Positions 10,810 to 54,194 of a stretch of DNA of 64,000 nt are shown here, piece by piece. Numbering within the stretch: position 1 is the stretch's first letter; each line of letters begins with the position of its first letter. The translations under genes were made by a program, and so were the position numbers. The stretch covers positions 62,001-126,000 of IMG/VR virus record IMGVR_UViG_3300023296_000874; one strand, 5' to 3'. Below the pieces are notes generated by a model that saw nothing but the letters and a program-made list of their open reading frames with translations, was not told where the DNA came from and did not search any database.

Positions 10810-11376
10810 ATGGACCGCATTGCATTTGCTCAGAAGATCAGCCTACTCGCCGACAAGGTGGCGCTGGGCAGCAAGGAGCCTCTCGAGCTCGTACCGGAGG
10901 GAGGCAAGACCCCTTCGAAGAAGGAGATCTCGAAGGCGTGGCCGAACCTCACCTACAAGGGCGACACCATCCACCCTATGAAGAGTGGAAACCTCTACGA
11001 GAAGTGGCAGGACAAGGCTGAGGACAAGCTCCGAGACGATGAGGGCATCGACAGCTTCCAAGAGGTGTATCTCGGGTACGACCCCAAGAAGGACCTCTTC
11101 GTCATGGGTTGGGACCTGTGGCCCGGTGAGGAAGAGTACGACGAGGATGACGAGTACGGAGAAGACGAGGATGGCTACGGACGCTACTCCTCAGAGGGAC
11201 CTCGGAAGGCTGCCGTCAAGAAGCAGGCGAACGACATGGGCTACGCACTCGCCACCATCAAGGATGGCAGGGTGAAGAGCGTTGAGGACTACTGGCCCGG
11301 AGGTGGCTTCTACCGCCACGGGCTCAAGATTGTTCACTCCCACTACAACGGAATCCTCGACCTCAGGCTCGACTGA
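10810..11376 (+). CDS. hypothetical protein with shared N-terminal leader (putative internal virion protein)
   Basis: GGAGG RBS; N-terminus AQKISLLADKVA; acidic central tract. Confidence 0.7.
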   Translation: MDRIAFAQKISLLADKVALGSKEPLELVPEGGKTPSKKEISKAWPNLTYKGDTIHPMKSGNLYEKWQDKAEDKLRDDEGIDSFQEVYLGYDPKKDLFVMGWDLWPGEEEYDEDDEYGEDEDGYGRYSSEGPRKAAVKKQANDMGYALATIKDGRVKSVEDYWPGGGFYRHGLKIVHSHYNGILDLRLD

Positions 11377-12275
11377 TGCACCCAACCCTGAACAGACTTG
11401 CACTCCTTGAGGTCCGGCTCCGCACGGCTGAGATCAGGGAGGCGGTCCGCCATGTGGTAGCCAAGAGCTTCTACCGTAGGCGGGAGGCATCTGTTCGACA
11501 CCTCACTCCGGAGGTGCTGACTGCCTTTGCAGAGGGATTCTGTGAGCAGCCACACAACGTCCGTGAGGCAGGCATTGGCGACATCGTCAAGAAGCTCTCC
11601 AAGCTGGTGAAGCTGTTCCGTCGCGCGCCCAAGCTGCTCGAGCGGATGAAAGAGTTCCTGGGAGATCTTGACCCTCGCACGATCCTGAAGTGGGCGAAGG
11701 ACGGTGTACGTGCTGCCGGGCGGAAGATTCAGAAGGCCGTCAAGTCATGGCCGCTGGCCATGTTCTTCTTCCCCAAGAGCAAGCTTCCGTCACTGAGCGA
11801 CATGATCGCCAACATCGTCAACGGCACCCGGATTGGAGACCTGCTCAAGAAGGTACAGAGCAAGGCGGTGTCGGTAGATGTATGGCTTGAAAAGCACCCT
11901 ATCATCAAGGGGATGTCGAAGCCGGTGCTTGCGGCAGCATTCATCTTCATCTGGATCAACGTCTCTGAGATCTCGTGGGACATGGAGAGCATCTTCCGTG
12001 GCTTCACGGGGCAGATGCCCTTCAGCGAGGTACTGACCTCACTGCCTGAGAGTGCAATCGGCCTGGTGTTTGCCAGCATGGGGATTGGATACGGCTTCAT
12101 GGGACCGGTTCTCATGGCGCGCATCATTTGGCTTGTGGCCTCGAACTACGTCGAGTACGTCCCCGGACGTGGCTTCAAGGTGTTCTGGGACGTCATGGGC
12201 AAGTACACACCGGAGAGCGGTACGTTCCTCGACCGGACGCCTGACGTACAGTTCTTCAAGTGGAGCCCCTCATGA
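11376..12275 (+). CDS. hypothetical protein with hydrophobic C-terminal helices (putative virion/membrane protein)
   Basis: Coupled to the upstream gene; N-terminus LNRLALLEVRLRTA; hydrophobic segments in the C-terminal third. Confidence 0.65.
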   Translation: MHPTLNRLALLEVRLRTAEIREAVRHVVAKSFYRRREASVRHLTPEVLTAFAEGFCEQPHNVREAGIGDIVKKLSKLVKLFRRAPKLLERMKEFLGDLDPRTILKWAKDGVRAAGRKIQKAVKSWPLAMFFFPKSKLPSLSDMIANIVNGTRIGDLLKKVQSKAVSVDVWLEKHPIIKGMSKPVLAAAFIFIWINVSEISWDMESIFRGFTGQMPFSEVLTSLPESAIGLVFASMGIGYGFMGPVLMARIIWLVASNYVEYVPGRGFKVFWDVMGKYTPESGTFLDRTPDVQFFKWSPS

Positions 12276-12685
12276 GCGACAAGACCGCCGCCCGCACCCT
12301 ACGTGAGTTCCTCCTGGCCGGGCAGACTGGACAGGACGATACTCGTGAGCTGCTCCCCTACTCAGGTGTGAACGGACCCAAGGTTCGGACCCTCCCAGAG
12401 GCCATCGCACACTCCAAGACCACGTCAGAGGACAGTGAGGAGTGGTTCAAGGCGAACACCCCGTACCACGGGCGTGATGTGATCGAGCACTTCGACGAGC
12501 TTGTGGGGCAGTTCACCGGGGCAGAGGTACGACCTCGTCCCGGTAGGGACGTTGACCTCATCTCAGGGAAGAGCGGACTCCAAACAAAGGGCTACAGCGA
12601 GGACCACTACACCGCTGTGCCTCAGACCTTCGAGGAGCTTTGCCTCGCGGCAATGGACCAAGAAGGCAAGACACCAAGGGAGTAG
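12272..12685 (+). CDS. hypothetical protein
   Basis: ATGA overlap with the upstream stop; begins MSDKTAART. Confidence 0.6.
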   Translation: MSDKTAARTLREFLLAGQTGQDDTRELLPYSGVNGPKVRTLPEAIAHSKTTSEDSEEWFKANTPYHGRDVIEHFDELVGQFTGAEVRPRPGRDVDLISGKSGLQTKGYSEDHYTAVPQTFEELCLAAMDQEGKTPRE

Positions 12686-12686
12686 C

Positions 12687-13499
12687 GTGAAGCTTTCAAC
12701 TGAAATCGCAGGACTCACCCGTCGCGCGAACGTCGAGAGTGTGACCAAGCACATCCAGACGTGGGGTGACAACGAACTTCGTCACCCGACCCGGTGGCAG
12801 AACGTCATCTACCTCTGCTATGAGCTCGCCAAGAGCACTCAGACCATCGCGGTTGGCGGACCTACATGGGACGGGCCGATGCGAGAGTGGGTCTACGTCA
12901 TGCCTGATGGCATTGGTGTAGAGATGAAGGGCCTTGTGTTCAATCTTGAGCCTGAGGCCTGGTACTACGAGGTTGGGATGGCACCCTGGCCCGACGCCCG
13001 GTCGCTTGAGTTCATCGGCCACAGAGACCACTGGACCCGTGTGTGGTACTGGGTGCTTGCGACGTTGGCTGTCCACGCCGCGAACGGAAAGCCCTATGCC
13101 GGTGTGGAGCGAGTAGTCAAAGGCCGACTCGCGGGCGTGACGTACTTGCAGGGCATGGTTGACCGCATCCTCCCCAAAGCTATTGAGGCGTACCGCAAGG
13201 TTCGCGGCTTTGACCCCAGCCTTGGTGAGTTGAGCGTGTCCTTTTCGGAGATCGTTCCGCCCGATGGGAAGATCGCCGTCTACCAACGGTTCGACTGCAA
13301 AGCCAAGCAGTGCGAGGGTGCCATCAGCATTCACCCGAAGGCTCTACGTGACGAGGGTGGTGAACAGTATCTCGAAACGGTACTCACCCATGAACTTGTC
13401 CACTATCTACTCAACTCGACCAACGCGGCTGACGCCCACGGAGGAGAATTCCAAGCAGTTTCAACACTGCTCGGAATCCCCCGTGAATTCCAGGACTAA
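12687..13499 (+). CDS. SprT-like zinc metalloprotease domain protein with shared leader
   Basis: C-terminal ISIHP...LETVLTHELVH....HGGEF (SprT HExxH...HG..F). GTG start at 12687 after GGGAG gives the leader STEIAGLTRRA. Confidence 0.7.
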   Translation: MKLSTEIAGLTRRANVESVTKHIQTWGDNELRHPTRWQNVIYLCYELAKSTQTIAVGGPTWDGPMREWVYVMPDGIGVEMKGLVFNLEPEAWYYEVGMAPWPDARSLEFIGHRDHWTRVWYWVLATLAVHAANGKPYAGVERVVKGRLAGVTYLQGMVDRILPKAIEAYRKVRGFDPSLGELSVSFSEIVPPDGKIAVYQRFDCKAKQCEGAISIHPKALRDEGGEQYLETVLTHELVHYLLNSTNAADAHGGEFQAVSTLLGIPREFQD

Positions 13500-13502
13500 C
13501 CA

Positions 13503-14024
13503 ATGACAACATCAGCGAACATCAAGAACCTCTCCGGCACCGTTAGTGCTCGCAAGCCACGCGCCCCGAAGCCTGGCGAGGTGTACCAGGACCCTGAGTC
13601 GAAAGAGTGGCTTCTGCTCCCCAAGAAGTACAACTCCAAGCCTGTGCGGATTGACGCACTGCTCCAGGTAGGCGGACTACCTCGACGTCAGGGCGACAAG
13701 GTGACACTCTGGTTCTTCAGGGACCCACCCGAGGGACACAGGTACTGGACCGACATGCACGATCCCGGCGTGGAGATTGACTACAGCAACTACCACATCG
13801 CTCTGGACTACGGACGGTACTTCTTCAGGAAGCAGGACGCTCTCAAGAACGCGAGCACCTGGGACACAGGCAAGGTGGTTGGCCTCATGTCGCTGGACCT
13901 TGACCGCCTGATGCAGAATGGACAGTTCAAGCGCAACGTCGCCCTCAAGACGAAGGGGCGCGGTGCCTCCGGAGGTACGGACGTCACCTCCGGACCGTAC
14001 CTCTACGTGAAGGGCAAGTTCTAA
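13503..14024 (+). CDS. hypothetical protein with shared leader
   Basis: Begins MTTSANIKNLSGTVSA, similar to MTTSAEISLLARSYIA of 53958-54194. Confidence 0.65.
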   Translation: MTTSANIKNLSGTVSARKPRAPKPGEVYQDPESKEWLLLPKKYNSKPVRIDALLQVGGLPRRQGDKVTLWFFRDPPEGHRYWTDMHDPGVEIDYSNYHIALDYGRYFFRKQDALKNASTWDTGKVVGLMSLDLDRLMQNGQFKRNVALKTKGRGASGGTDVTSGPYLYVKGKF

Positions 14025-14299
14025 GCCTGAAGGTTCGTGACGCCGATGAGCTCCCCGAGCAGCGTGCGGCTGAGAGGTTTGCCAGGCTTGTCCTCGTACA
14101 CCTCCCGAACCACGATGCGCTGTGGCGTGCTCTTGGGCACGGACCCCCAGCCCTTGGTGTTGGGAGTGACGTCTGCTGCTGCTTCGTCCCGCATCTTGCA
14201 GTAGACGGCTTGCAGGGTGAGGTCACTGGCATGTCGCATGGTGCCGAAGACGGGCGTCTTGGACGTCAGCCGGTACAGCACATAGATGTATCCGTTCAT
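14021..14299 (-). CDS. hypothetical protein
   Basis: ATG 14299 with GAGG RBS, overlapping the stop of 14296-14487. Confidence 0.55.
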   Translation of the reverse strand: MNGYIYVLYRLTSKTPVFGTMRHASDLTLQAVYCKMRDEAAADVTPNTKGWGSVPKSTPQRIVVREVYEDKPGKPLSRTLLGELIGVTNLQA

Positions 14300-14487
14300 C
14301 GCACAACCTCGAGCGTGTAAGCGGTGAGGCCGAAGCCGCAACCGACGTGATCCTCGGCCCAGGCAATCGCCTGCTCGATGCGGGTGAAGGTCTTGCGGCG
14401 CTTGGGGTCGTCGGTGCGCTGCACACATTGGTGCTCTTCACTGAAGCCCGCGATGTCTTTGCCGCTTTGGTCTTTGAGGTAGTGCAT
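14296..14487 (-). CDS. hypothetical protein (63 aa)
   Basis: ATG 14487 preceded by CGGAG, downstream of a class A promoter. Confidence 0.6.
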   Translation of the reverse strand: MHYLKDQSGKDIAGFSEEHQCVQRTDDPKRRKTFTRIEQAIAWAEDHVGCGFGLTAYTLEVVR

Positions 14488-14492
14488 GGTGT

Positions 14493-14533
14493 CTCCGTAC
14501 CCACTCAACGAGAGCAGGTACGGAGGACTCAGA
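14493..14533 (-). promoter_or_regulatory. Class A promoter TCTGAGT-N16-CGTT (14507-14533) with RBS-sequestering hairpin
   Basis: tctgagt-cctccgtacctgctct-cgtt; inverted repeat ctccgtacc/ggtacggag (14493-14525) pairs with the GGAG RBS. Confidence 0.7.
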
Positions 14534-14535
14534 GA

Positions 14536-14703
14536 CTATGACACGTCCTTCACGTAGCTACCCGGACAGGCGAGGTTCCCGTCCTTGTCTTGAATGGACG
14601 TGTTGGTACACCTCTTCCGGAGGGGGAGTCTGGTCCACCTCACTCTGAACCCGCAGGTGTCGCAGATGTACATCGACTTCAGCAGTGGCATTCGGAACCG
14701 CAT
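14536..14703 (-). CDS. 55-aa zinc-ribbon microprotein (below the ORF-track cutoff)
   Basis: Hand translation MRFRMPLLKSMYICDTCGFRVRWTRLPLRKRCTNTSIQDKDGNLACPGSYVKDVS; GAGGTG RBS. Confidence 0.6.
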   Translation of the reverse strand: MRFRMPLLKSMYICDTCGFRVRWTRLPLRKRCTNTSIQDKDGNLACPGSYVKDVS

Positions 14704-14707
14704 CGGA

Positions 14708-14887
14708 TCACCTCTTCTTGAGAGCGATGCCGTAGCAGATCATCCGGGTGCCACAGGGCTCAACGACCTGCCTCCCGTTTCTTCCTGCGTACTCGACGGG
14801 GTTGGGGCATGAGGGGCGCAGGATGAGCCCGCGCTTGATGAAGGTGTGCCCACATGAGGGGCAGCGGTATTCCTTGGGGACGATCAT
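14708..14887 (-). CDS. 59-aa zinc-ribbon microprotein
   Basis: YRCPSCG...CPN...PCG; same Cys layout as 14536-14703. Confidence 0.6.
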   Translation of the reverse strand: MIVPKEYRCPSCGHTFIKRGLILRPSCPNPVEYAGRNGRQVVEPCGTRMICYGIALKKR

Positions 14888-14889
14888 CG

Positions 14890-15235
14890 GAGTCTTTCCA
14901 GCCGCGAACGGGCTGTCCAGCCTACACATTCCGTGCGGCTGTAATCAAGGGTCTCTGACCGACGAAGGCACCCCGCTCACGTCCAACCCCATTCTTTGCA
15001 CGGAGGAGGGAAGGTGTGAGCGGGGTGCCCAGTCGAAAGATCGCCAGTCCACTCGCTCCCTTGCCTTGGGAGTCCGCTTCGCATACAGGGGGCTGGCATG
15101 GCTCCCATCTAACCGCCCATGGTGCTCAGGCCCCTCTCGAGGCGCTGATCCATAGAGTGCATAACACTTGCCGGGTTCGAACCGGCCACTCACAGGCGCT
15201 GGCAAAAGTCTTCGGGGCTTCTCAGCCCCTTACAT
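14890..15235 (-). ncRNA. candidate structured ncRNA or long structured leader (~350 nt)
   Basis: Own class A promoter at 15242-15268; GNRA-capped hairpins (ggggct-GAGA-agcccc, gcctc-GAGA-ggggc); canonical T-arm gccgg-TTCGAAC-ccggc (15170-15186); 14-bp perfect stem 14967-14980/15016-15029; no credible ORF. Confidence 0.5.
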
Positions 15236-15241
15236 CTCTAC

Positions 15242-15268
15242 AACGAGGCGAGAGCGGCAGCACTCAGA
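15242..15268 (-). promoter_or_regulatory. Class A promoter TCTGAGT-N16-CGTT
   Basis: tctgagt-gctgccgctctcgcct-cgtt. Confidence 0.7.
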
Positions 15269-15270
15269 GA

Positions 15271-15642
15271 CTATTCCGCCCTTTCTTTGGCATCCGCCTC
15301 GTGATCGTCGATTGCCCTCTTGAGCTCAACCAGTTCGTCGTTGGCGCGGTCAAGAGCAGCTTCCAGAGAGCGTCCCGCACGTTGAAGGTCCTCTGCCACC
15401 TCTTCAGCGGCGAGTACCTTCTCCGAGGCAGCGTCGAGCAGCTCCCTCAAACTCTCAATCGAGCCGAGGTGTGGGCGGTAAAACTTGAGCTGTCCCTGCA
15501 CGTACTCAATCGAGTTGCTGGGGTCAGTGTGGTTGATCCTGTTCGCAAGATCCCAAACCATTCGGACGGCCGCAGCCAGGTCGGACTTTGAGTACCTGCT
15601 CGCCTGTCGGGAGAGATGGCTGATGCGGTCTGAAACGTTCAT
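15271..15642 (-). CDS. coiled-coil protein with shared leader (putative internal virion protein)
   Basis: GGAGG RBS; begins MNVSDRISHLSRQA; class B motif 25 nt upstream. Confidence 0.7.
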   Translation of the reverse strand: MNVSDRISHLSRQASRYSKSDLAAAVRMVWDLANRINHTDPSNSIEYVQGQLKFYRPHLGSIESLRELLDAASEKVLAAEEVAEDLQRAGRSLEAALDRANDELVELKRAIDDHEADAKERAE

Positions 15643-15666
15643 GAGGCCTCCGTTGATGAGGCGGGT

Positions 15667-15683
15667 CTACAAACGGATTATGT
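15667..15683 (-). promoter_or_regulatory. Class B (putative late) promoter motif
   Basis: Minus strand ACATAATCCGTTTGTAG, overlapping the topA stop. Confidence 0.7.
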
Positions 15684-17963
15684 CGCAGGCGTCTCGGGAA
15701 GAGGGTTGTAGTCCCCTATGGCGTTGCACACGAAGTCGCAGTGCTCGCTCCACTTCTTGCAAGCGTAGAAGGCCTTCTTCTTTTTCTTGCTGTACCGCTC
15801 CACCACGAAGTCTTCACACTTCGGGCAGATGCCACATGGAACCGGGTGCGTACCACGGCAGCCTTCGCCAGTACACTTCAGGTACTCGCCGTAGCGTCCC
15901 GTCGTCTTGACCATCGGATCTTCACACTTGTCACACACGATGCCTGGATAGATCTCGTCAGGCACAACCTCGACGTTCGGGTCAACCCATGAGGCCTTCC
16001 CCTTGCACTTCGTCTCCTTGTACTTGGTGCATCCCCACCAGTTGCCCCACTTACCCGCCTTGAGCTCCATTGGAGCCTCGCACTTCGGGCACTCAGGGAT
16101 CTCAACTCCCTCGCCAACCTCAGGAGGTGGCTCAGGGACGTGGATCTGAGGGAGGCCGTTGGCGTCACGGAGCAGAACTCCGGCGTCATCAGTCAGGCAG
16201 GTAGTCTTGCAGTCCGGGTACTGGTCGCATGTGTACCAGAAGCTTTCACCACCGGTCTCAGGCTTCTTGAGGATGTACCCGACGCCGCACGCTGGGCACT
16301 TGTCCTCAGTGCGGAAGAGGAACTTGGCGTCACCCTCGCGGGCTCCCTTGAGGTCCGCCTTGAAGGGTGTGTACCACTCCTCGAGCACGCTGACGTAGGT
16401 GGCGCTTCCGGCAGCCACTTCATCGAGCTTGTCTTCCATCTCAGCGGTGAAGGTGGGGTCAACCAGCTTCGGGAAGAAGGTCACCATGTAGTCGAACACC
16501 ATCTTGCCGAGGTCTGTCGCCTGGAAAGAGCGTCCGGCCTTGACGGCGAACTTGCGGGTCAGGAGCGTCTTGAGGGTGGACGCGTAGGTAGCGGGTCGCC
16601 CAACTCCGTCGCTCTCCATCTTCTTCACCAGCGAGGCGTCGCTGTATCGGCCCGGAGGCTGGGTGAACTTCTGCTCCAGCTCGATGTCGGTGAAGGGAAT
16701 CTCGTCGCCTTCGTTGATGTCAGGGAGGATCACGTCCGCCGTACCGGAGCCGTACACCTTCAGGAAGCCGTCGAACAGCATCTTGGAGCCGTTGAGCTTG
16801 AAGTTGACGGGCAGCTTGGTGTCGATGCTCACAAGCTCAACCCGGAGCTGCTCGAAGACGGCGTCTGCCATCTGAGATGCCCAGTAGCGGTTGCGGATGA
16901 GCTCGAACAGTCTGAACTGGTCACCGGTCAATGCGCCGGGGTCTTCACCCGTGGGGCGAATGGCCTCGTGAGCCTCCTGGCTGGCCTTCTTGTTCTTGTA
17001 CTTGTTCTCCGAGTCGGAGATGTGGTCCTTGCCTTGAGCCTTCTCAAGCTCGTCCCTCATGGCAGCCATCTTCTCCTTGTCGATGGAGGTGCTGTCTGTA
17101 CGGTGGTAGGTGATGACGCCCGCTTCGAAGATCTTCTGCGCGGTGATCATCGTCTTGTCGACGCTCCAGCCGAGCATGTTGTTCCCGGCCTGCTGAAGGG
17201 TCGCGGTGGTGAAGGGAGCGGCGGGCTTGCGCCTACGCTCTGAACGCTTCACGCTCGACACACGGAGCTTCTTGCAGCTCTCGTTCATGAGCTGCCGGAT
17301 GCCTTGAGAGGTCTTCGCCGTGCGAATGGTCTTCGCCTTGTTGTTGACGCCGTACAGCCGAGGCTTGTAGCCGTCGCACACTGCGTCAATCAGCCAGTAC
17401 TCCTCAGGGATGAAGGCTTCGATCTCCCTCTCCCTATCGACAACGTACTTGAGCGCCACGCTCTGCACACGTCCGGCTGAGGCACCGGCAATGCCCTTAC
17501 GCCACATGATAGGGCTGACACGGTAGCCGACAAGGCGGTCAATCACGCGCCTGCCCTGCTGAGCCTCGAACAGGTTGTTGTCGATCTCACCCGGATCAGC
17601 GATGGCTGCGAGTACGGCAGGCTTCGTGATGGAGTGGAACAGGACGCGGTGGACGGTCTTCCCGCGCTTGGGAAGCTTGGAGGCGATGTGTACGGCAATA
17701 GCCTCGCCTTCACGGTCGGGGTCAAGAGCGAGATAGATGATCTCGTGCTTCTTGGCCTCATCGACAATCGCCTTGATCGTACCACCTTTGCCACTGATGA
17801 CTTCGTAGGTGGGATCGTAGGTCTTGCTACGGGTGTTGACTCCGACCTTCTTGGGCGGAAGATCAATCACATGGCCCTTGGTTGCCATGATCTTGAAACT
17901 CCCGCCCAAGATGGAACTGAGCTTGCGGATTTTGTTCGGGCTTTCGATGATTACGAGCGGCAC
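15678..17963 (-). CDS. topA: DNA topoisomerase I (type IA) with C-terminal zinc ribbons
   Basis: LVIIESPNK, DPDREGEAIA, SAGRVQS, ITYHRTDS (catalytic Tyr), QEAHEAIRPT, GVGRPATYA; four C4 zinc ribbons. Confidence 0.97.
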   Translation of the reverse strand: MPLVIIESPNKIRKLSSILGGSFKIMATKGHVIDLPPKKVGVNTRSKTYDPTYEVISGKGGTIKAIVDEAKKHEIIYLALDPDREGEAIAVHIASKLPKRGKTVHRVLFHSITKPAVLAAIADPGEIDNNLFEAQQGRRVIDRLVGYRVSPIMWRKGIAGASAGRVQSVALKYVVDREREIEAFIPEEYWLIDAVCDGYKPRLYGVNNKAKTIRTAKTSQGIRQLMNESCKKLRVSSVKRSERRRKPAAPFTTATLQQAGNNMLGWSVDKTMITAQKIFEAGVITYHRTDSTSIDKEKMAAMRDELEKAQGKDHISDSENKYKNKKASQEAHEAIRPTGEDPGALTGDQFRLFELIRNRYWASQMADAVFEQLRVELVSIDTKLPVNFKLNGSKMLFDGFLKVYGSGTADVILPDINEGDEIPFTDIELEQKFTQPPGRYSDASLVKKMESDGVGRPATYASTLKTLLTRKFAVKAGRSFQATDLGKMVFDYMVTFFPKLVDPTFTAEMEDKLDEVAAGSATYVSVLEEWYTPFKADLKGAREGDAKFLFRTEDKCPACGVGYILKKPETGGESFWYTCDQYPDCKTTCLTDDAGVLLRDANGLPQIHVPEPPPEVGEGVEIPECPKCEAPMELKAGKWGNWWGCTKYKETKCKGKASWVDPNVEVVPDEIYPGIVCDKCEDPMVKTTGRYGEYLKCTGEGCRGTHPVPCGICPKCEDFVVERYSKKKKKAFYACKKWSEHCDFVCNAIGDYNPLPETPAT

Positions 17964-18025
17964 AGGTATTCCTCCATCGCTCCATCAAATGCCAAAATCA
18001 AGCCCGCAGTAGCGAACTCAACTTC

Positions 18026-18316
18026 TCAGCGACGGCCGTTCACCTTGTCGGCCATGAGGTTCGAGCTCTTGTAGGTGACCTTCAGGTAGGGCTCGACGTA
18101 GCTCTTCTCACCCGTGCGCGGGTTGCGGGCCTGGCGGTCGCCCTTCTTGACGGAGCGGAAGGTACCGAGGCCGGTGACGGTCACAGCGCCTCCCTCTTCG
18201 TTGAGCTCACCCTGCAGGGAGCCGACGAAGCCCTTCAGGGCTTCACGCACCTGGGCGTCGTTGAGGTTGGTGGAGCCGACGATGTCAGCGACGAGGGTAT
18301 TCATGGTAAGTGCCAT
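18026..18316 (-). CDS. HU/IHF-family DNA-binding protein
   Basis: VTVTGLGTF....R.ARNPRTGE. Confidence 0.9.
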   Translation of the reverse strand: MALTMNTLVADIVGSTNLNDAQVREALKGFVGSLQGELNEEGGAVTVTGLGTFRSVKKGDRQARNPRTGEKSYVEPYLKVTYKSSNLMADKVNGRR

Positions 18317-48500: not shown

Positions 48501-50280
48501 TCACTACAACCTTGTCGATCGCGTTGCTGGTCGAATTGTAGATGTCGTAGTAGTTGCCGATGAACGTACATCCCTGAAGGACGGTGATGTCAGAGCCACT
48601 CTTCAGAGTGATGCCACAGCCCTTGGGAGTGCCGGAGTCGTTGTACCAGTTGCCGAACGTAGTGTTGGTGATGGTGCAGTTCTGAGCCCGAAGGTCGATG
48701 CCGAAGGGGTCTTCGGTAGTCCAGGAGGTCTTGGTGCAAACGAGCTGGCAGTCAACAATCCGGGTACCCGATCCGTCGATTCGAATTCCAACGATACCGT
48801 CAGCCGCTCGGCCCGTAACCGAGGAGGTGGATACCACCGTGTTCCCGCCCTGCAAGTACATCCCCGTTGCCGTGTCAACCATCTGGCAGTCGGAGATGAT
48901 CAAGCCATCAACGCTACCGTCAGTCTCAAGGCCCGTGGTTGCATCTCGGACGGTACACCCGCTGACCGTGTTCCCCAGCGTGGCACCACCAAGCTCAATT
49001 CCTACCGTGCCCCCGAAGAGGTCGATGACGGTGTCAGATAGCGTGTTGCTCTCACTACGGAGAAATACACCCGTATCGAACTTCGAGATGTAGCAGGCGT
49101 CTACCTTGTTGGATCCCTCGCCCGGCGTAGGAGCCTGAGCCGTAGTACCAATCTCGATAGCCGAGCCGGATCCCCCACCGACGCTCTTGATGATGCAATC
49201 ACGGATGATGCACCGATCCGGCCGTCGGATGCTGATGCCCGTGTCAGATACATCCTGAACGTTGCAGTTGAACATCCGGAATCGCTGTGTGGCCGATCCA
49301 AACTCAGCGAGGTTCACTGCATACGTGTAGGGAGTGCCACCGTCCACGAAGACGCAGTGGTCAATAGTCAGCCCATCGGAGTTCCCCGTCGAGTCACTGA
49401 TCGCCTCGCAGCCCGTGTGCTTGCTGCTGAAGGCCAGGTCCTTGAAGGTGACGTTGTCCTGTCCGTTGAGCAGGAAGTTCGAGGTGGTGTTCGCCCCCGT
49501 CTCAATGATGGTGCCTGAGCCCTCACCACGGATGGTGATGTTGCCTACGGGGAGCACTACGTCCTGAAGTACATGCCCACCACGGAGGACGATCTCGGAG
49601 CGGAGTTCGCTTCCGCTCGGCTGGTAGGTCTCGATCCAGGCAAGCGCGGCCTCAACACTCATGAAGTTGCCTTCAGAGCGCTCGTCGTGTGTCGGGTTGG
49701 AGGATCCGGCCCGTACCGTGATGGAGGGCTTGCGGTCAGCTCCGTACACGAACATACGGAGATCGCTGACGTCCGTGACGCCCGATCCGTCAGTAGTCAG
49801 CTTCCACAGTACGACGTTGCCGCTGCTTGCGGAAGGGATGCCCGCACTCTGCTTCATGTCGTTGTCAGCGGGGTCGATGTAGAGGTATCGCGTAGCTGTG
49901 GCGTCTACCGTCACTTGCTGTCCGGATACGTCCGTGGCGGTACCGTTGATGAGTACCTTGGAGTTCGCCACCAAGGTCACGGAGAGTCCTGCGGTGTTGG
50001 TACCGCACTCTCCGAGCACGCCAGGCGAGCTGTGCTCGTCAAGGGTCGCCCCAACCTGCGTCAGTGCAGACTCAACCTCATCCCCGTCGTAGCGGTCCTG
50101 AGTGTCGAGCAGGCTGATTGCCGACGCATCGTGAGCATCGACAGGGTCAAGCAGGTGGGCGGTGAGCCCTGAGGATGTCGTCAGATCAAAATCAAGGGCT
50201 TGCTCAGAAACGGTCTTGTCGAGATCGCGTCCGGGTCGGCCAACCTTGTTGAGATCAATCGGGTCCTTGGATACTGGCAT
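45526..50280 (-). CDS. tailspike / receptor-binding protein with very long right-handed beta-helix
   Basis: H......HDASAIS fibre motif, then more than 1200 aa of I.GN.I/GI PbH1-type repeats. Confidence 0.85.
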   Translation of the reverse strand: MPVSKDPIDLNKVGRPGRDLDKTVSEQALDFDLTTSSGLTAHLLDPVDAHDASAISLLDTQDRYDGDEVESALTQVGATLDEHSSPGVLGECGTNTAGLSVTLVANSKVLINGTATDVSGQQVTVDATATRYLYIDPADNDMKQSAGIPSASSGNVVLWKLTTDGSGVTDVSDLRMFVYGADRKPSITVRAGSSNPTHDERSEGNFMSVEAALAWIETYQPSGSELRSEIVLRGGHVLQDVVLPVGNITIRGEGSGTIIETGANTTSNFLLNGQDNVTFKDLAFSSKHTGCEAISDSTGNSDGLTIDHCVFVDGGTPYTYAVNLAEFGSATQRFRMFNCNVQDVSDTGISIRRPDRCIIRDCIIKSVGGGSGSAIEIGTTAQAPTPGEGSNKVDACYISKFDTGVFLRSESNTLSDTVIDLFGGTVGIELGGATLGNTVSGCTVRDATTGLETDGSVDGLIISDCQMVDTATGMYLQGGNTVVSTSSVTGRAADGIVGIRIDGSGTRIVDCQLVCTKTSWTTEDPFGIDLRAQNCTITNTTFGNWYNDSGTPKGCGITLKSGSDITVLQGCTFIGNYYDIYNSTSNAIDKVVVTGCQFEAAENHSIFITTANEVQVTGNHFRSGVAEAGAFYVYLDEITSGTINDNVMDCNDVGGGIYLEGANSASDRTIGMSIVGNQINSVATFGISLSQYVRNTNISDNIIDGFIGSSTDVTGVGIHASYSGGSPGHRHISINNNQITRLITGIEAQGSNASMLSHLTISGNTISNIAVASTTSGETWENTGTKAIGLEYVTGALVSGNNIYDIGQLVNNTGTSYQPSGTHVNAYGIYAENCDRLNITSNVIAQCLIKGTARGVGIEVAYRNDSSGTTTKQGHKVTGNSITNTDDAGIVVRVEPGTISAGTFVLKMVTVTDNTIDNVRGNGIAVLADGTVGDPCVLRNLVISDNQLDLITDNAIEGGTDGYGSFYSVTITGNHITDATAGTDDGINLSAQSINSGDFKDFVISGNQFQGSSHGAAISLSSHTADIDNVTVNNNHCTEWNTFLKIYAGHTGAGNLNRLIALGNNIYKTDDMSFSIEAQNDITNVNISDNIAEALSDSLSDHLYFGSTTGGVVRATVKGNQFVGSGGRMVHFETDTVYRTTITGNNFEDTFSTATLEGIKLNLAGGTSPHLRMLTITDNTFYLIGSYGIHIEDIDAASGTMDDIRIQNNTFHLVAYTSVNYSAIYINPTGIRVTQIQIISNFFDNCGTSGAAVGQIRLGSSTGDMGISDVDISGNMLTGGNGHGIHLDIEDPILSEFQNISICSNRIETEADGILVEFGTTTTSPDQINISNNSIWDCGGSGILLDLSETASPDGIHVNGNNIWSCGDHGIYISPSTTATGQLRGLSITGNSCSDNTNHGIFIDGVNTATQFSVRGMSVCSNVCTSNGEDGIRWRHSTSSASVNAQMTGILFNDNNCYGNGEYGMYLIMRGRVMELSVCNNTLNVNSNGFRIYTGVAGEQDGGGSLVSTIAGTIPGGVIINGNIARDNATEDVNNSIDGGQRGTNWPPAQGVMVGNIDSDSGDDQWPDLHDNTWTNSANNLTVV

Positions 50281-50309
50281 TGGTGTTCTTTCCTATGCTT
50301 CTGAGTCTA

Positions 50310-52886
50310 TCAGAGGAGGCCGAGGCCGATCTGGTACTTCCGGGGGCTAACGATGGGGTTGCCCTTCAGTCGGTACAGAGCGACACAGCTATCTCCGCCA
50401 CCAGCCAGGTCAAAGGCTACGGCGTTTTGTTCGTCATTTGATGTACGGGTGAAAACCATGAGGAGCAAAGTTCCTCGCTTTCCAACCAGTGTGTCTTCTA
50501 CGCAAACAGCGATGCATGGGTAGAGCACACGATGTGGCTTGTCGCCTTGAAGGGATTTGGCGTGGACGCTGGGCTGGTAGATAACCGGGCTTCCAAGCAC
50601 CACATCGTCGTAGGCGCTGCCTCTCAACTCGCTGTAGTAGCTCCGTCCCTCGCCGTCTGTACCCACACTCGTGAAGGCCAGGAAGGGTACGTGCGCCAAG
50701 GGCACATTCACGGGCAACCTGATGAGGCCCCCGTCCGTACCAAAGTCATCCACGCTCAACGCCTGATCGAAGTTCAGGAGGTGGTCTCCGGCATTCATGG
50801 AGGCGTTTGAGGAAGGGAACTGGGAGGCTGGCGAAACGTAGGGGTAGCCCGCGTTGTGTCCACCCGATCCAGCGGTAGTGGTGTAGAGCCAATCAGGAGC
50901 GTAGAGCATGTGGAGGTTCACGTCGGCTACGTTCAAGCCGCCCGCGCCCACGTTGAGGCTCTGCTGTGCGGGGCTCTGGTAGTACAGGGAGCACTGCGAA
51001 ACTGCGGGGAGCGGCTCCTTGCTGATGTAGTCCACGATCATCGCACGGTGAGCAGCGGGTACTGCGGTGTGGAGGATGATGTTGTCCTCCGTGCCGATGC
51101 CCAGATACAGGTTGGTGCTCTTGCCGGGGTCTGCCACGCCGTCGTAGATGCCGGTCACCGTTCGGATCTGGTGAGGCAGGTGTGTCTCTCCTGTAGTCCG
51201 AGAGGTGATGGCGAGGTCCGTGTAGGTGAACTGCACCACCAGGCACGCGGTCCGGCTGGGCTTGTAGAACAGGCTGTCGGGATCCATGGTAGTCGATACC
51301 ATGCCGCCTGGAACCACGTTCTCGTACACCAAGCCATCACCCGCAGTCAGCGTAGTGATGTCACCCGAAGTGCCGATGCCTTCCTGGTAGAGGTGCGGTG
51401 TGCGGCTGAGGCCCGCGTCACCGGGGAACATGACGCCCACCTTCACGAATAGCGTGCCGCCTGTGCGGCTACCTACCGGGATGTTGGTGTCAAAGTCCGG
51501 GGAGAGTACGACGGTCAGGGTCTTGGTGTTCAAACCCGTCACGGAGAAGTCAACGGAGGAGTACCCACTGAGGGTCCCCATCACTTCAATGCGCTCAAAC
51601 AGCCCGTCAGATGCCACCGGGAGGCCGATGTCGAACGTGTCTCCGGCTCCCCAGATGCCGCCCGTGATGGCTACGGTTCGGTCACCGAGTGTGATCTCTT
51701 GGAACACCTCGTTGCCGGTCACCGCGTCGCTGAAGTGCTTGCGGAAGGCGTCTGCCTCCCCAATGAGCGTAGCGCCAGGAGTGTCAACGGGTCCAACCTC
51801 GTCGATTGCCCGGATGTACGTGCCGCGCCCACCACCGCCGAGGTTGTGGTCCTCGAAGTCGGTCTTGAGCTTGTTGTCGAGCAGCCAGGCGAAGTTCCTC
51901 TTGAGCATGGCTTCCATGTCCCAATCAGCGCTCACCGTCTTGCGGAGGTCCAGGATGTCCTGCTCAACGACGTCATCGTGAGCAAAGCCGGTGGGTGAGG
52001 TGCCCGAGCCACCGTTCTGGTTGGTGTCCTGAGCCCAGGTGGTCTGGTTCCGACGTGCCACGGCGCAGAGCGGGATCGCGTAGATGTTCCCGTCTACCGT
52101 GTGGGTGGTCGTGTTGTGTCCGCTGGATACCCAAAGGCCGGGGTCACCATCGACGTTGCTGCTGGTAAATGCGATGGCTGACGGGGAGGAGTCAGGGCCT
52201 TGTGCCAGTACGTTGCCGGTGTCGTCCAGCCCGTCGGGGTAGGAGTACATGTCCACGTCTTCAACGATGCGGATGCGCCACTGGATCTGCACACGCCTGG
52301 ATGTCTCCGCACCTACACCGCCGTCCAACACGTCATCGACGAAGTTGTCAGCGGTAGGGGAGTCTACCCAACCGTTGTAGAAGATCTTGCCGTTGGCGTC
52401 ACGGTGTCCGTTGGTGGTGTCCGTGGCAGCGGTGCCCGTCAGGGGCGCACGCCATACCTCAATGAACACGAGGTCCCAGCGCTTCGCACCAACGCCTGTC
52501 GGGGCCGCTGGTAGCGTGATGGTGAGCCACTCTTCGTTCTTCTCCTGCAGGTTCACGAGCATGTCAGCTACGTGAGCTACCTGTCCGGGTCCGAAGTAGA
52601 AGGTATTGGCAGTGGTGCCGCCGCCGAAGGTCTTTTCGTTCCTGAAGTTGCCTGGCTCATCGATGTAGCCAGTGCCGACAGGGAACACGTCGGGGCTGAA
52701 GTAGTCCCGGCTGAACAGAAATCCCGAGCAGATCTGCCCGGATCGGTAGAGGTGCTTGAGGAAAAGTTCGCCCGCGAGGTTGAACTCTTTGTCCAGCGGT
52801 GGTCTGCCCGTGCGCCAGGTTACCTGTTCGAGCGACTTGTTGTCGGGCTCGAGGTATCCGCTCACGGGACCGAAGTCCTTGCTCAT
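50310..52886 (-). CDS. baseplate/tail structural protein (858 aa), paralog of 40030-44862
   Basis: GRPPLDKEFN, VFIEVW, GAETSRRVQIQWRIR, DPGLW, VDGNIYAIPLCAVARRN. Confidence 0.75.
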   Translation of the reverse strand: MSKDFGPVSGYLEPDNKSLEQVTWRTGRPPLDKEFNLAGELFLKHLYRSGQICSGFLFSRDYFSPDVFPVGTGYIDEPGNFRNEKTFGGGTTANTFYFGPGQVAHVADMLVNLQEKNEEWLTITLPAAPTGVGAKRWDLVFIEVWRAPLTGTAATDTTNGHRDANGKIFYNGWVDSPTADNFVDDVLDGGVGAETSRRVQIQWRIRIVEDVDMYSYPDGLDDTGNVLAQGPDSSPSAIAFTSSNVDGDPGLWVSSGHNTTTHTVDGNIYAIPLCAVARRNQTTWAQDTNQNGGSGTSPTGFAHDDVVEQDILDLRKTVSADWDMEAMLKRNFAWLLDNKLKTDFEDHNLGGGGRGTYIRAIDEVGPVDTPGATLIGEADAFRKHFSDAVTGNEVFQEITLGDRTVAITGGIWGAGDTFDIGLPVASDGLFERIEVMGTLSGYSSVDFSVTGLNTKTLTVVLSPDFDTNIPVGSRTGGTLFVKVGVMFPGDAGLSRTPHLYQEGIGTSGDITTLTAGDGLVYENVVPGGMVSTTMDPDSLFYKPSRTACLVVQFTYTDLAITSRTTGETHLPHQIRTVTGIYDGVADPGKSTNLYLGIGTEDNIILHTAVPAAHRAMIVDYISKEPLPAVSQCSLYYQSPAQQSLNVGAGGLNVADVNLHMLYAPDWLYTTTAGSGGHNAGYPYVSPASQFPSSNASMNAGDHLLNFDQALSVDDFGTDGGLIRLPVNVPLAHVPFLAFTSVGTDGEGRSYYSELRGSAYDDVVLGSPVIYQPSVHAKSLQGDKPHRVLYPCIAVCVEDTLVGKRGTLLLMVFTRTSNDEQNAVAFDLAGGGDSCVALYRLKGNPIVSPRKYQIGLGLL

Positions 52887-52925
52887 GTTGCTCCTCTAAT
52901 CTGGATGTGGTGTGTATTTGGGGGT

Positions 52926-52965
52926 GGAACAGGGCGCTGGGGTCCGGGGTCCCAGCACCCATTCC
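52926..52965. terminator. GC-rich intergenic hairpin
   Basis: ggaa..ggg.gctggg/cccagc.ccc.ttcc; no clear U-tract. Confidence 0.35.
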
Positions 52966-52980
52966 GATCTTCAGGTTGGA

Positions 52981-53193
52981 TCAACCACCAGCACCCGGAC
53001 CACCGCTCTCCTGGTTCGCGCCGACAGCGGCACTTGCAGAAGCAGTGTTGTTCACGGTGAGGCCTGCACGCAGGCCGGGGTTGAGCTTGGGAGGACCACC
53101 GCCGAGAGACGGGATGTGCGTGTTGACGCTGGTCTTCACCTTGCCATTGAGGCTGATGCTTCGCATCTTGAGCCGGTTGTAGTAAACAGCCAT
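52981..53193 (-). CDS. small hypothetical protein
   Basis: GGAGAG RBS; located in the structural operon. Confidence 0.5.
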   Translation of the reverse strand: MAVYYNRLKMRSISLNGKVKTSVNTHIPSLGGGPPKLNPGLRAGLTVNNTASASAAVGANQESGGPGAGG

Positions 53194-53274
53194 GAGTTTC
53201 TCTCCAGTTTGGTTTTTCGACGTCGAATTGCCTGATGGATGTGTGTATCTGAGGAGTATAGCCTCGTAAGGTCC

Positions 53275-53949
53275 CTACTCCGAATTACTGCTCTCATGGA
53301 TTTCGTAGGACAACTCTCCAAGCTTCAAGGCAGTCTTCTGGATCTCGGCCCGAAGGGATTTCAGTTGGCGGTCCTGTCCATCGAGTAGGGGGCCGTAGCC
53401 GGAGAGGAGCTCAAGTTCGTGAGCGATACCTCCGATGCCTCTGTGGAGCCAGTTGACAGAATCCTTGAAGTGGGTTTCGTAGTACCTATCGCCGCCGCGC
53501 GAGTGTTTGGCTGAAGTCACAGCCTTGTCAGCAGCAGTCGTGCCCCCACCGAGCATTCCTGAAATGTCTCCGAGTCCCGAGTCGAGGTCCTCAATGGCAT
53601 CTTGTACCGCCACGATCTCAGAGTGGAAGGCGTCCATGGCACTGGAGCCTCCCATCTCGTCCGGTAGCTTATCAAACTCTTCAGTCACGTCACCGAGCGC
53701 GTCGGTAAGTCGGCTCATGGCACGCTTGAAGTGCTTGCGGTAGATCGGGTCCGACGAGGCCTGCACCGTCCGCGCAAGGCGGCTGATGTTGTCAGAAAGG
53801 CTCGCCTTGAAGGTGTGGTCAGGCTTCATGTTCTTGTAGATTCCCATGATGTACGCATAGTTGCCGCCCTTGCCCGCTTCAGCAGCGATTTCCTTGGCAC
53901 GGTCCCACTTGTGTTCGTCGCGGGGTGTGTCAACTACGCCACCGGGCAT
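53275..53949 (-). CDS. putative virion protein with an internal copy of the shared leader
   Basis: N-terminal E..W..AK......YAYIMGIYK.M module, then KA-SLSDNISRLARTVQA, then helical domains. Confidence 0.7.
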   Translation of the reverse strand: MPGGVVDTPRDEHKWDRAKEIAAEAGKGGNYAYIMGIYKNMKPDHTFKASLSDNISRLARTVQASSDPIYRKHFKRAMSRLTDALGDVTEEFDKLPDEMGGSSAMDAFHSEIVAVQDAIEDLDSGLGDISGMLGGGTTAADKAVTSAKHSRGGDRYYETHFKDSVNWLHRGIGGIAHELELLSGYGPLLDGQDRQLKSLRAEIQKTALKLGELSYEIHESSNSE

Positions 53950-53957
53950 GTCAGCTC

Positions 53958-54194
53958 CTACTTGTTTTCTTGGATGGAAGAGAACCTGTGCAACGTCTTC
54001 CGCATGTCCTGCAGCCGGTCACGCGCCTTTTCGGGCGAGTAGCTCAGCAGAGCCAGAATCTCATCAACTTCCTTCACAAGAGGCTTCACAACTACGGTCG
54101 GCTTGCCGGTGTCGCGGACGTCCATGTCCATGTAGCGAGCGCGGTCGGCAATGTAGGAGCGAGCAAGGAGGGAAATCTCAGCGGATGTGGTCAC
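53958..54194 (-). CDS. small protein with shared leader
   Basis: GAGG RBS, GTG start, MTTSAEISLLARSYIA. Confidence 0.65.
   Translation of the reverse strand: MTTSAEISLLARSYIADRARYMDMDVRDTGKPTVVVKPLVKEVDEILALLSYSPEKARDRLQDMRKTLHRFSSIQENK

What the first reader, a model, noticed from the sequence alone, without database searches (positions are those of the whole stretch)
10810..54194. Shared N-terminal leader on unrelated late proteins: candidate capsid-targeting / maturation signal
Otherwise unrelated proteins start with the same amphipathic pattern [SA]-x-x-I-[SAK]-x-L-[AST]-x-x-(x)-(x)-A: AQKISLLADKVA (10810), STEIAGLTRRA (12687), SANIKNLSGTVSA (13503), SDRISHLSRQA (15642), SAEISLLARSYIA (54194), internal SDNISRLARTVQA (53275-53949), and more loosely LNRLALLEVRLRTA (11376). 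All lie downstream of class B motifs. K/R-x-A sites (RTA, KTA, KQA, RFA) recur near the N-termini. T4 internal proteins use a short cleaved capsid-targeting sequence, and phiKZ head proteins are cut at x-x-E. Inference: an analogous but different address tag, probably cleaved after Ala, loads a cargo set that is ejected into the host.
Basis: partly seen in the sequence, partly recalled or inferred. Interest (0 to 1): 0.82.

Follow-up and report, generated by a model that had tools for sequence, protein, structure and literature searches.

The report
Shared terminal address helix on phage proteins
A set of otherwise unrelated small proteins of an uncultured 257-kb jumbo phage begin with the same short helix, related phages carry the same device with their own consensus, and it looks like a docking tag for a partner that is still unknown.

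Summary
In my 63 gene calls for the window, [SA]xxI[SAK]xL[AST] occurs six times, five within the first 15 residues (0.025 expected). Four have Ser exactly at residue 4. Codons differ between copies and the proteins share nothing else. A relaxed form is also enriched at N-termini outside the window (3 found, 0.10 expected).

Two closer relatives (L022, L023) carry the same kind of tag on orthologues and on proteins at other cluster positions. One distant lineage (L031/L032) uses another consensus, [VIL][AST]xR[FYW][LI], at N- or C-termini. Neither consensus turns up at N-termini of the other lineage. In the SprT-like zincin family the tag is an optional add-on.

I read it as a modular docking helix that brings a fast-changing set of accessory proteins to one common partner. 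The assembling virion is the most likely destination (inferred, about 0.35). The tag is probably not cut off:
- It also occurs internally and at C-termini.
- No conserved cleavage site follows it.
- [KR]xA is not clearly enriched.

Rival partners are the phage's volactin-like actin, a conserved membrane-like protein, and a protease or unfoldase. No match to a described family was found. The partner and destination remain untested.

The parts
10810..11376 (+). 188-aa protein; tag residues 5-19 (AFAQKISLLADKVAL, nt 10822-10866); first gene of the + strand cluster
   Evidence: Weakest canonical member (leave-one-out rank 62). A near-identical tag, LAQQISKLADQI, heads a 100-aa protein in relative L022.
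11376..12275 (+). 299-aa all-helical, membrane-like protein with a loose tag (TLNRLALLEVRLR, nt 11385-11423); the most conserved cluster member
   Evidence: The start at 11376 is confirmed by orthologues and by the database gene call. 23 homologues on contigs up to 433 kb; their N-termini carry the tag of their own lineage (xVxDRY[LIM]). AlphaFold model: helix 2-29, mean pLDDT 68.
12272..12685 (+). 137-aa protein with a loose tag (TAARTLREFLLAG, nt 12284-12322)
   Evidence: By eye, homologues P0013 and P0026 look like fusions of this protein with the next one; no alignment was run. They begin with clear tags, KLSRTISEYAAAI and KVSRTIAEYAAAI.
12687..13499 (+). 270-aa SprT-like zincin (HELVH at nt 13389-13403) with tag residues 3-14 (LSTEIAGLTRRA, nt 12693-12728)
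   Evidence: Pfam SprT-like E = 2.6e-5, below the curated cut-off. 80 homologues. H235, E236 and H239 nearly invariant. AlphaFold pLDDT 91.7, helix 2-27, first 10 residues pLDDT 61. The tag is present or absent among homologues.
13503..14024 (+). 173-aa orphan protein with tag residues 3-16 (TSANIKNLSGTVSA, nt 13509-13550), followed by a Pro/Lys-rich linker
   Evidence: The homologue search returned only the protein itself.
15271..15642 (-). 123-aa protein just downstream of the topoisomerase IA gene, with tag residues 3-15 (VSDRISHLSRQAS, nt 15598-15636)
   Evidence: It has its own promoter-like motif at 15667-15680.
53958..54194 (-). 78-aa protein with tag residues 3-16 (TSAEISLLARSYIA, nt 54147-54188), inside the run of tail-region genes
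   Evidence: The gene is absent between the flanking orthologues in L007/L014 and in the close relative L004, so it is accessory.
53275..53949 (-). 224-aa protein: a conserved 45-aa N-terminal module (nt 53809-53949), then an internal tag at residues 51-64 (LSDNISRLARTVQA, nt 53758-53799), then a variable body
   Evidence: The N-module is shared with P0002-P0007, which have unrelated bodies (P0006 has weak, sub-cutoff C39-like peptidase hits; PF13529 is precomputed for P0006 and P0007). A tag-like helix follows the module in P0002-P0004.
10760..10773 (+). promoter-like motif TGATCCTTTTGTAG, 43 nt upstream of the 10810 start
   Evidence: 7 exact TTTGTAG in 92.6 kb, 6 of them just upstream of gene starts (19-45 nt for the five scored there; about 34 nt for the small ORF at 54969).
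15667..15680 (-). promoter-like motif TAATCCGTTTGTAG, 31 nt upstream of the 15642 start
54997..55010 (-). promoter-like motif TAATCCGTTTGTAG at the head of the run of same-strand genes that holds the 201-aa, 78-aa and 224-aa genes and the large tail-spike-like genes

Best explanation
The shared segment is a modular docking helix, an 'address tag' of about 13 residues.

Anatomy:
- A Ser or Thr sits at the point where the helix would start.
- Hydrophobic residues at positions 3, 7, 10 and 14 (Leu/Val/Thr, Ile, Leu, Val/Ala) would line one narrow face of a helix.
- A Gly/Pro/Ser-rich break usually follows.

Where it sits: it is placed on the N-terminus, and less often on the C-terminus or a domain boundary, of otherwise unrelated and rapidly exchanged accessory proteins.

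What it does (inferred): it brings them all to one common phage-encoded partner. Tag and partner appear to co-evolve, so different phage lineages use different consensus sequences. In this phage it is [SA]xxIxxL[AST]. In the L031/L032 lineage it is [VIL][AST]xR[FYW][LI].

Shown: the enrichment, the positional lock, the modularity, conservation in relatives, and the reciprocal specificity between two lineages.

Inferred:
- That the tag is a binding element.
- That the most likely destination is the assembling virion (scaffold or capsid interior). On that reading the tagged proteins (a zincin protease, a membrane-like protein and small orphans) would be a packaged and possibly ejected cargo set. 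This works like the T4 capsid targeting sequence or the encapsulation peptides of protein shells.
- That the tag is probably not removed by cleavage.

My confidence is about 0.7 that it is a docking tag and about 0.35 that the destination is the virion.
For: - Enrichment and position lock.
- Protein-level conservation, with no similarity beyond the tag.
- Closer relatives:
  - L022 has a tag or tag-like helix on all four genes of the syntenic cluster.
  - L023 has two RIRRLA-type tags in 2.5 kb.
- Distant lineage L031/L032:
  - In L031 alone the narrower pattern V[AS]xR[FYW]L has 4 N-terminal and 1 C-terminal hit in 6,075 aa (0.028 hits of any kind expected).
  - Orthologues keep the pattern.
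- Reciprocal test:
  - The window-type pattern is N-terminal in 8 of 139 proteins here and 0 of 45 there.
  - The L-type pattern is N-terminal in 6 and C-terminal in 1 of 45 there, and N-terminal in 0 of 139 here.
- Modularity in the SprT-like family.
- Helix models:
  - AlphaFold gives a helix at residues 2-27 whose first 10 residues have lower confidence.
  - The 11376 family has a helix at residues 2-29.
- Pointers toward the virion:
  - The promoter-like motif is shared with tail-region genes.
  - Two tagged genes lie in the run of tail-spike genes.
  - Further tagged genes lie a few kb from the 1,193-aa gene I take to be the tail sheath.
  - In L031 the tagged genes lie just upstream of the large terminase.
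  - Gene content around the tags changes between close relatives, as in the T-even internal-protein loci, which keep only the targeting sequence (PMC3012670).
Against: - No experiment and no virion proteome is available. No tagged protein has a homologue in a cultured phage.
- The main cluster lies beside replication genes (topoisomerase IA and HU in conserved synteny, plus DNA polymerase and a DnaB-like helicase in the window).
- Some SprT-like homologues are fused to topoisomerase IB, which points to DNA metabolism.
- No head gene was identified in the ~132 kb read. The ClpP-like 'head maturation protease' sits next to a Band_7 gene, which could equally make it an NfeD/stomatin-type pair.
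- In a third lineage (L039) only the membrane-like protein shows a clear tag in 16.8 kb.
- The tag patterns were defined after looking at the data. Only the out-of-window test and the reciprocal test are semi-independent. In the reciprocal test each pattern's hits in its own lineage include the instances that defined it; the cross-lineage zeros do not.
Confidence: 0.45

Rival explanations
1. The tag helices bind one another or the conserved membrane-like protein (the 11376 family, which carries the tag of its own lineage). That would assemble a membrane-anchored complex. The minimal unit would be the membrane-like protein plus the SprT-like zincin.
For: - The 11376 family was the anchor for every lineage with tags, and it is itself tagged.
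- In P0092's contig the cluster is just a 284-aa homologue plus a 255-aa gene next to it.
- Hydrophobic spacing 3-7-10-14 is heptad-like (read from the sequences).
- The C-terminal half is hydrophobic and conserved.
Against: - All distant lineages were found through this family, so its presence is partly by construction.
- Tagged genes also lie far from it (53 kb, and 158-168 kb of the contig).
- Thirteen residues is short for a stable coiled coil.
- Membrane topology was not predicted with a dedicated tool. The fold search found nothing.
Confidence: 0.15
2. The tag is a terminal helix that docks into the hydrophobic groove of the phage's own actin homologue (volactin-like). This would resemble the C-terminal helices of ParR or arcadin-2, or WH2 helices on actin (from my own knowledge). 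Tagged proteins would be recruited to a phage cytoskeletal filament.
For: - A 349-aa Volactin-family protein (E = 1.7e-64) is flanked within about 5 kb by four clearly tagged small genes and a fifth with a tag-like stretch near its called start.
- A sixth tagged gene, the 166-aa one, lies about 5 kb upstream. One of the flanking genes lies directly before the volactin gene and two directly after it.
- Actin-family regulators typically bind through terminal amphipathic helices that work at either end of the protein.
Against: - It is not known whether the L031/L032 lineage has an actin homologue.
- The 66%-identical relative L036 apparently keeps the actin gene (a partial first ORF, not scanned against Pfam). 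It lacks the 103-aa and 55-aa tagged genes after it.
- More than ten different filament binders in one phage would be unusual.
- No interaction could be modelled here.
Confidence: 0.12
3. Exactly: a T4-like N-terminal capsid targeting sequence that the prohead protease removes after an Ala.
For: - The general analogy with the T4 targeting sequence (PMC3012670).
- A ClpP-like protein matching PHROG 'head maturation protease' at E = 2e-50 is encoded in the window.
- An Ala lies 7-9 residues after the Ile in all six copies.
Against: - The Ala position is not fixed, and [KR]xA is not clearly enriched.
- Internal and C-terminal copies exist.
- The tag is continuous with helix 1 of the zincin domain.
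- No x-x-E or other shared site follows the tag (reading).
Confidence: 0.08
4. The tag is a degradation or unfolding signal. It would be read by the phage's ClpP-like protease, with a host or phage AAA+ partner such as the 528-aa AAA protein, to time the removal of these proteins.
For: - A ClpP-like gene and a conserved AAA+ gene in synteny with the cluster.
- Clp recognition signals sit at protein termini. From memory, the lambda O N-terminus resembles MTTSANIKNLSG; this is a lead, not a test.
Against: - An internal copy lies behind a folded module.
- The Ser-started, patterned helix is better conserved than typical degrons.
- The tagged proteins show no shared basic residue as in ClpX N-motif 1.
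- Nothing links the AAA+ protein to proteolysis.
Confidence: 0.07
5. There is no common function. The pattern would be a generic N-terminal amphipathic helix picked out after the fact, or a by-product of translation-start constraints.
For: - The patterns were defined after looking at the data.
- 10810 is marginal.
- The third lineage, L039, is unconvincing.
Against: - Five found against 0.025 expected.
- Out-of-window P = 1.7e-4.
- Reciprocal lineage specificity.
- C-terminal and internal copies cannot arise from translation-start effects.
- Codons differ between copies.
- The 5' RNA fold is not unusual (z = 0.36).
Confidence: 0.08

Closest known systems
T4 capsid targeting sequence (CTS) of the internal proteins IPI, IPII and IPIII
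   Same: - A short N-terminal leader is the only thing shared by a diverse, fast-changing set of small proteins (PMC3012670).
- The carrier genes differ between close relatives.
   Different: - The T4 CTS is strictly N-terminal and is cut off by the prohead protease at a defined site (from my own knowledge).
- Here the tag also occurs internally and at C-termini, and no conserved cleavage site follows it.
- Packaging is unproven, and the sequence is unrelated.
Encapsulation peptides of bacterial microcompartments, and cargo-loading peptides of encapsulins (HK97-fold shells)
   Same: - A terminal amphipathic helix joined by a flexible linker to unrelated cargo.
- It works at either terminus and is not cleaved.
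- An Ile-x-x-Leu-type hydrophobic pair (from my own knowledge of these systems).
   Different: - No microcompartment or encapsulin shell gene was seen in the ~132 kb read. The only candidate shell is the phage capsid, which was not found in that stretch.
- The consensus differs.
Terminal helices that dock on actin-family filaments (ParR on ParM, arcadin-2 on crenactin, WH2 on actin)
   Same: - A short terminal amphipathic helix on unrelated proteins.
- The genes lie next to an actin-family gene.
   Different: - No sequence match was tested.
- The interaction was not modelled.
- Most tagged genes lie 45-90 kb from the volactin-like gene.
PIP-box and clamp-binding motifs (Qxx[ILM]xx[FY][FY]; bacterial QL[SD]LF)
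   Same: - The same 1-4-7-8 spacing.
- A location at the extreme terminus.
- One carrier is a SprT-like protease, and human Spartan has a PIP box (from my own knowledge).
   Different: - No Gln and no aromatic pair in this phage's version.
- No sliding clamp was identified in the window.
- Several carriers lie in tail-gene surroundings.

Membership tests
T4-type capsid targeting sequence | Short leader shared by otherwise unrelated proteins | tested here: met
T4-type capsid targeting sequence | Strictly N-terminal and followed by a conserved prohead-protease site | tested here: not met
   Internal copy at residue 52. C-terminal copies in relatives. No common site after the tag. [KR]xA not clearly enriched.
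T4-type capsid targeting sequence | Carrier proteins are present inside proheads and virions | not testable with these tools
   No cultured relative.
phiKZ/SPN3US-type propeptide processing | Cleavage motif [SAG]-x-E after the propeptide | tested here: not met
   By eye (no pattern scan): no recurrent x-x-E at a fixed distance after the tag in the nine canonical copies.
Encapsulation / cargo-loading peptide | Terminal amphipathic helix plus flexible linker, at the N- or C-terminus of unrelated cargo | tested here: met
   Helix predicted. Gly/Pro/Ser-rich stretch after the tag in most copies. C-terminal copies.
Encapsulation / cargo-loading peptide | A cognate shell protein with a binding site for the peptide | not tested
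   Major capsid and scaffold genes were not found in the ~132 kb read. No complex modelling is available.
Paralogous gene family (shared descent of whole proteins) | Similarity extends beyond the leader | tested here: not met
   All-against-all BLASTP with relaxed settings finds only the first 20 residues (E = 4-10).
PIP-box / clamp-binding motif | Qxx[ILM]xx[FY][FY] or QL[SD]LF | tested here: not met
   The first position is Ser/Ala and positions 7-8 are Leu plus a small residue.
SprT-like zincin (12687-13499 only) | HExxH with a third His ligand downstream | tested here: met
   H235, E236, H239 and H251 are nearly invariant in 43 homologues. The Pfam SprT-like match has E = 2.6e-5, just under the curated cut-off.

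The most novel reading that the evidence does not exclude
Uncultured jumbo phages use a previously undescribed address system that co-evolves with each lineage. A 13-residue terminal helix marks a fast-changing set of accessory proteins for loading into one phage-built structure, the virion interior or an actin-like filament. The set includes a zincin protease here and, in relatives, weakly C39-like peptidases; a NUDIX/2H-phosphoesterase protein carries only a weak tag-like stretch. If so, the tag alone would let one read a phage's cargo set directly from its sequence.
Probability: 0.35. Interest if true: 0.8.

Novelty: new variant of a known kind. Interest (0 to 1): 0.62.

Why it matters
- If the tag is an address, it identifies from sequence alone which orphan proteins of these large uncultured phages travel together. 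Such proteins are plausible counter-defence or takeover factors.
- It would also provide a short portable peptide for loading foreign proteins into the same structure, as the T4 targeting sequence does.
- The lineage-specific consensus offers a handle for finding the receptor by co-variation.
- It gives a concrete, testable entry into proteins that currently match nothing in Pfam, PHROGs, the PDB or cultured phages.

Tried and rejected
Searches that found nothing useful:
- DNA searches against GenBank phages.
- PHROGs and Pfam on the tagged proteins: nothing except a weak SprT-like hit.
- tblastn of the 11376 and 12687 proteins against cultured phages.
- Scans for the 11376 family in IMG/VR and in JGI metagenomes found only the source contig itself. 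The genome collection gave nothing.
- Fold searches of both AlphaFold models gave no meaningful match.
- ESM Atlas returned only unnamed viral clusters.
- Pfam on the 45-aa N-module found no family.
- Two context look-ups returned gene tables but no DNA. One look-up failed because my start codon differed from the database call.
- The topoisomerase query brought in only distant, non-syntenic phages.

Ideas tested and dropped:
- Paralogy of the tagged proteins.
- A DNA- or RNA-level cause. Codons differ between copies, and the 5' region does not fold unusually (z = 0.36).
- [KR]xA cleavage sites.
- The exact 9-mer TTTGTAGAC is not enriched as such. The 7-mer TTTGTAG is informative through its position upstream of genes.
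- A 32-aa ORF with a tag-like peptide at contig 128,560 is a false call that lies antisense to a real gene.
- The polyvalent-protein lead: the large homologues carry NUDIX or topoisomerase IB domains, and no MuF domain.
- A third lineage, L039, gave no convincing sharing of the tag.

Full report
**Source and gene calls**

The window is positions 62,001-126,000 of IMGVR_UViG_3300023296_000874. This is also JGI Ga0222664_1000010, a 257,533-bp, 59% GC contig of an uncultured jumbo phage.

The window encodes:
- a DNA polymerase, a tail-spike-like protein and a baseplate-wedge-like protein;
- a DnaB-like helicase, a primase zinc ribbon and AAA+ proteins;
- a topoisomerase IA gene, assigned by synteny.

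It has no DNA similarity to GenBank phages. I called genes with a codon-usage model trained on the long ORFs. Where they could be compared, the calls agree with the database's own gene calls.

**The observation**

- Among 63 proteins (19,577 aa), [SA]xxI[SAK]xL[AST] occurs 6 times (0.51 expected). Five of these lie within the first 15 residues (0.025 expected).
- Four proteins have Ser at residue 4, Ile at 7 and Leu at 10.
- A leave-one-out PSSM puts four copies at rank 1 of 18,982 positions. 12687 is at rank 6 and 10810 at rank 62.
- Codons differ between copies. The 5' region of the mRNA is not unusually structured. The proteins share nothing else. The signal is therefore a protein-level motif on unrelated proteins.
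- [KR]xA is not clearly enriched.

**Independent test in the same genome**

I extended the read-out of the contig to about 43-175 kb. The pieces overlap without conflict. The outermost pieces come from near-identical contigs of other samples (0 and 1 mismatches in the overlaps).

- In 74 proteins outside the window, the relaxed pattern [SA]xxIxxL[AST] starts within the first 10 residues three times (0.10 expected, P = 1.7e-4).
- The new carriers (MSTSRDIGVLSRRL, MKKLAREIYKLAWAV, MTVSTEIQRLAAL) lie in an island around a Volactin-family actin homologue. So do several looser ones (MPSDKPSDRLATLRAEV, a 55-aa protein made of two tag-like helices, and ..TASRIARLIVAL).
- No tag was seen on the large tail-region proteins or in the metabolic region at 43-62 kb.

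**Relatives**

- L022 is a syntenic locus with topoisomerase IA and HU. All four genes of its + strand cluster begin with a tag or tag-like helix: MSTLNRIAMLE, MNLSKKIAAMASKIA, MKKLSRTISEYAAAI and MTKKLAQQISKLADQI.
- L023 has two RIRRLA-type tags in 2.5 kb. One is visible only from a GTG start behind a strong ribosome-binding site.
- The SprT-like zincin (12687) has 80 homologues.
  - Many distant ones start with a tag-like helix.
  - Others have the same following domain and no tag.
  - The 60%-identical orthologue P0009 lacks the tag, with a stop codon directly upstream.
- The tag is therefore a modular add-on.
- The two tagged genes at 53-54 kb are absent between the flanking orthologues in more distant relatives. 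In a close relative a different gene takes their place.

**A second consensus in another lineage**

The membrane-like protein (11376) has 23 homologues on contigs of up to 433 kb. In distant ones the N-terminus reads xVxDRY[LIM].

- In L031 the pattern V[AS]xR[FYW]L occurs 5 times in 6,075 aa (0.028 expected). Four are at residues 4-8 of unrelated proteins and one is at an extreme C-terminus.
- The orthologues in L032 keep the pattern with substitutions.
- Reciprocal test:
  - The window-type pattern is N-terminal in 8 of 139 proteins here and in 0 of 45 there.
  - The L-type pattern is N-terminal in 6 and C-terminal in 1 of 45 there, and N-terminal in 0 of 139 here.
  - Each pattern's own-lineage count includes the instances that defined it. 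The cross-lineage zeros are the independent part.
- This is what a tag that co-evolves with a receptor would look like.
- A third lineage (L039) showed a clear tag only on the membrane-like protein, so the generality is not settled.

**Anatomy**

- The hydrophobic positions are 3, 7, 10 and 14, with a Ser or Thr where the helix would begin.
- A Gly/Pro/Ser-rich break usually follows.
- The AlphaFold model of the zincin is confident (pLDDT 91.7, pTM 0.90). Residues 2-27 form one helix, and the first ten residues have lower confidence (61).
- The 11376 family has a helix at residues 2-29.
- In the 224-aa protein the tag lies behind a separate 45-aa module. That module is fused to quite different bodies in other phages, including ones with weak C39-like peptidase hits. 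Tag-like helices follow it in P0002-P0004, and one lies at the C-terminus of P0006/P0007.

**Expression context**

TAATCC-N-TTTGTAG lies just upstream of several gene starts: 19-45 nt for the five that one search scored, and about 34 nt for a small ORF at 54969. The genes are:
- 10810;
- 15642;
- the divergent sugar-nucleotide operon;
- a small ORF at the head of the run of genes that holds 54194 and 53949;
- the 690-aa gene;
- a 462-aa tail-region gene.

Six of the 7 exact TTTGTAG in 92.6 kb are placed this way. I infer, and have not shown, that this is a promoter class shared with structural genes.

**Interpretation**

The best reading is a docking tag that gathers a changeable set of accessory proteins at one partner.

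Pointers toward the virion:
- the shared promoter-like motif;
- tagged genes inside and beside tail modules;
- in L031, a position just upstream of the large terminase;
- the parallel with the T-even internal proteins (PMC3012670).

Against a cleaved signal:
- internal and C-terminal copies;
- no shared cleavage site;
- continuity with the first helix of the zincin.

Against the virion reading:
- The main cluster lies next to replication genes in conserved synteny.
- Topoisomerase IB fusions occur in the zincin family.
- No head gene or proteome is available.

The rival partners are the membrane-like protein, the volactin-like actin, and a ClpP/AAA+ system.

**Novelty**

I found no match to any described family in Pfam, PHROGs, the PDB, BFVD, the GenBank phages or the papers searched. 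In kind it resembles known address tags, so I rate it a new variant of a known kind.

Noticed in passing
outside the window: contig 161,350-162,399 (L035:3231-4280 +; L038:13100-14149 +): A 349-aa actin homologue of the Pfam Volactin family (E = 1.7e-64). This family is known from Haloferax volcanii cell-shape control (PMC10869688). Here it is in a phage whose other genes look bacterial (HU, VanY/PG_binding), and it is flanked by small tag-bearing genes.
   Followed up: partly
window 1015-3855 (- strand): A ClpP-like protein at 3166-3855 (PHROG 94 'head maturation protease', E = 2e-50), then DUF3228, a 72-aa gene and a 372-aa Band_7/SPFH protein. This could be a prohead protease, or an NfeD/stomatin-like protease-SPFH pair. 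No portal or capsid gene lies beside it.
   Followed up: partly
window 10746-10773, 15667-15680, 54997-55010 and 57588-57601; contig 128,423-128,436: A promoter-like motif, T[AG]ATCC-N-TTTGTAG, lies just upstream of start codons (19-45 nt for the five scored; about 34 nt for the ORF at 54969). It includes a divergent pair at 10746-10773. Six of the 7 exact TTTGTAG in 92.6 kb are placed this way.
   Followed up: partly
window 53809-53949 (-): A 45-aa N-terminal module (PRDEHKWxKAKEIA..NYAYIMGIYKNMKPDH) has no Pfam family. ESM Atlas feature and structure similarity (scores below its stated lead threshold) points to 50-70-aa stand-alone proteins in many tailed phages. In other phages it is fused to unrelated bodies, including ones with weak C39-like peptidase hits.
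   Followed up: partly
window 12687-13499 and homologues P0047, P0085, P0058: In other phages the SprT-like zincin family is fused to a eukaryotic-type topoisomerase IB catalytic core or to NUDIX. In this phage group it sits in conserved synteny near topoisomerase IA and HU. That hints at a role with DNA-protein adducts.
   Followed up: partly
window 4677-10719 (- strand): An operon with a nucleotidyl-transferase, a PLP enzyme (PALP), two LPG_synthase_C-like proteins, a methyltransferase and a T5orf172 protein. It is possibly a DNA or surface modification pathway.
   Followed up: no
window 58346-59275 (+): A CNNM/CBS-domain (CorC/HlyC-like) membrane protein is encoded between tail-region genes.
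   Followed up: no
outside the window: L038:704-4115 (-) and L038:5461-7455 (+); L020:13824-15317: Phage-borne ABC-transporter genes (ATPase, permease, NMT1/OmpA-like binding protein). A 664-aa protein combines a 2H phosphoesterase (weakly Acb1-like), DUF4258 and NUDIX, with a tag-like stretch TSSQIQKLARVVR right after the NUDIX domain. There is also an Asx-tRNA-synthetase-like gene.
   Followed up: no
outside the window: contig 152,336-155,917 (-): A very long (1,193 aa) gene that is probably the tail sheath, judged only from its N-terminal PGVY-type signature. It is conserved at 66% identity in L036.
   Followed up: no
L031:14179-15078 and L031:16412-18289: In the distant lineage, a ferritin/Dps-like 299-aa protein and the large terminase lie just downstream of the tagged membrane-like and 273-aa proteins.
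   Followed up: no
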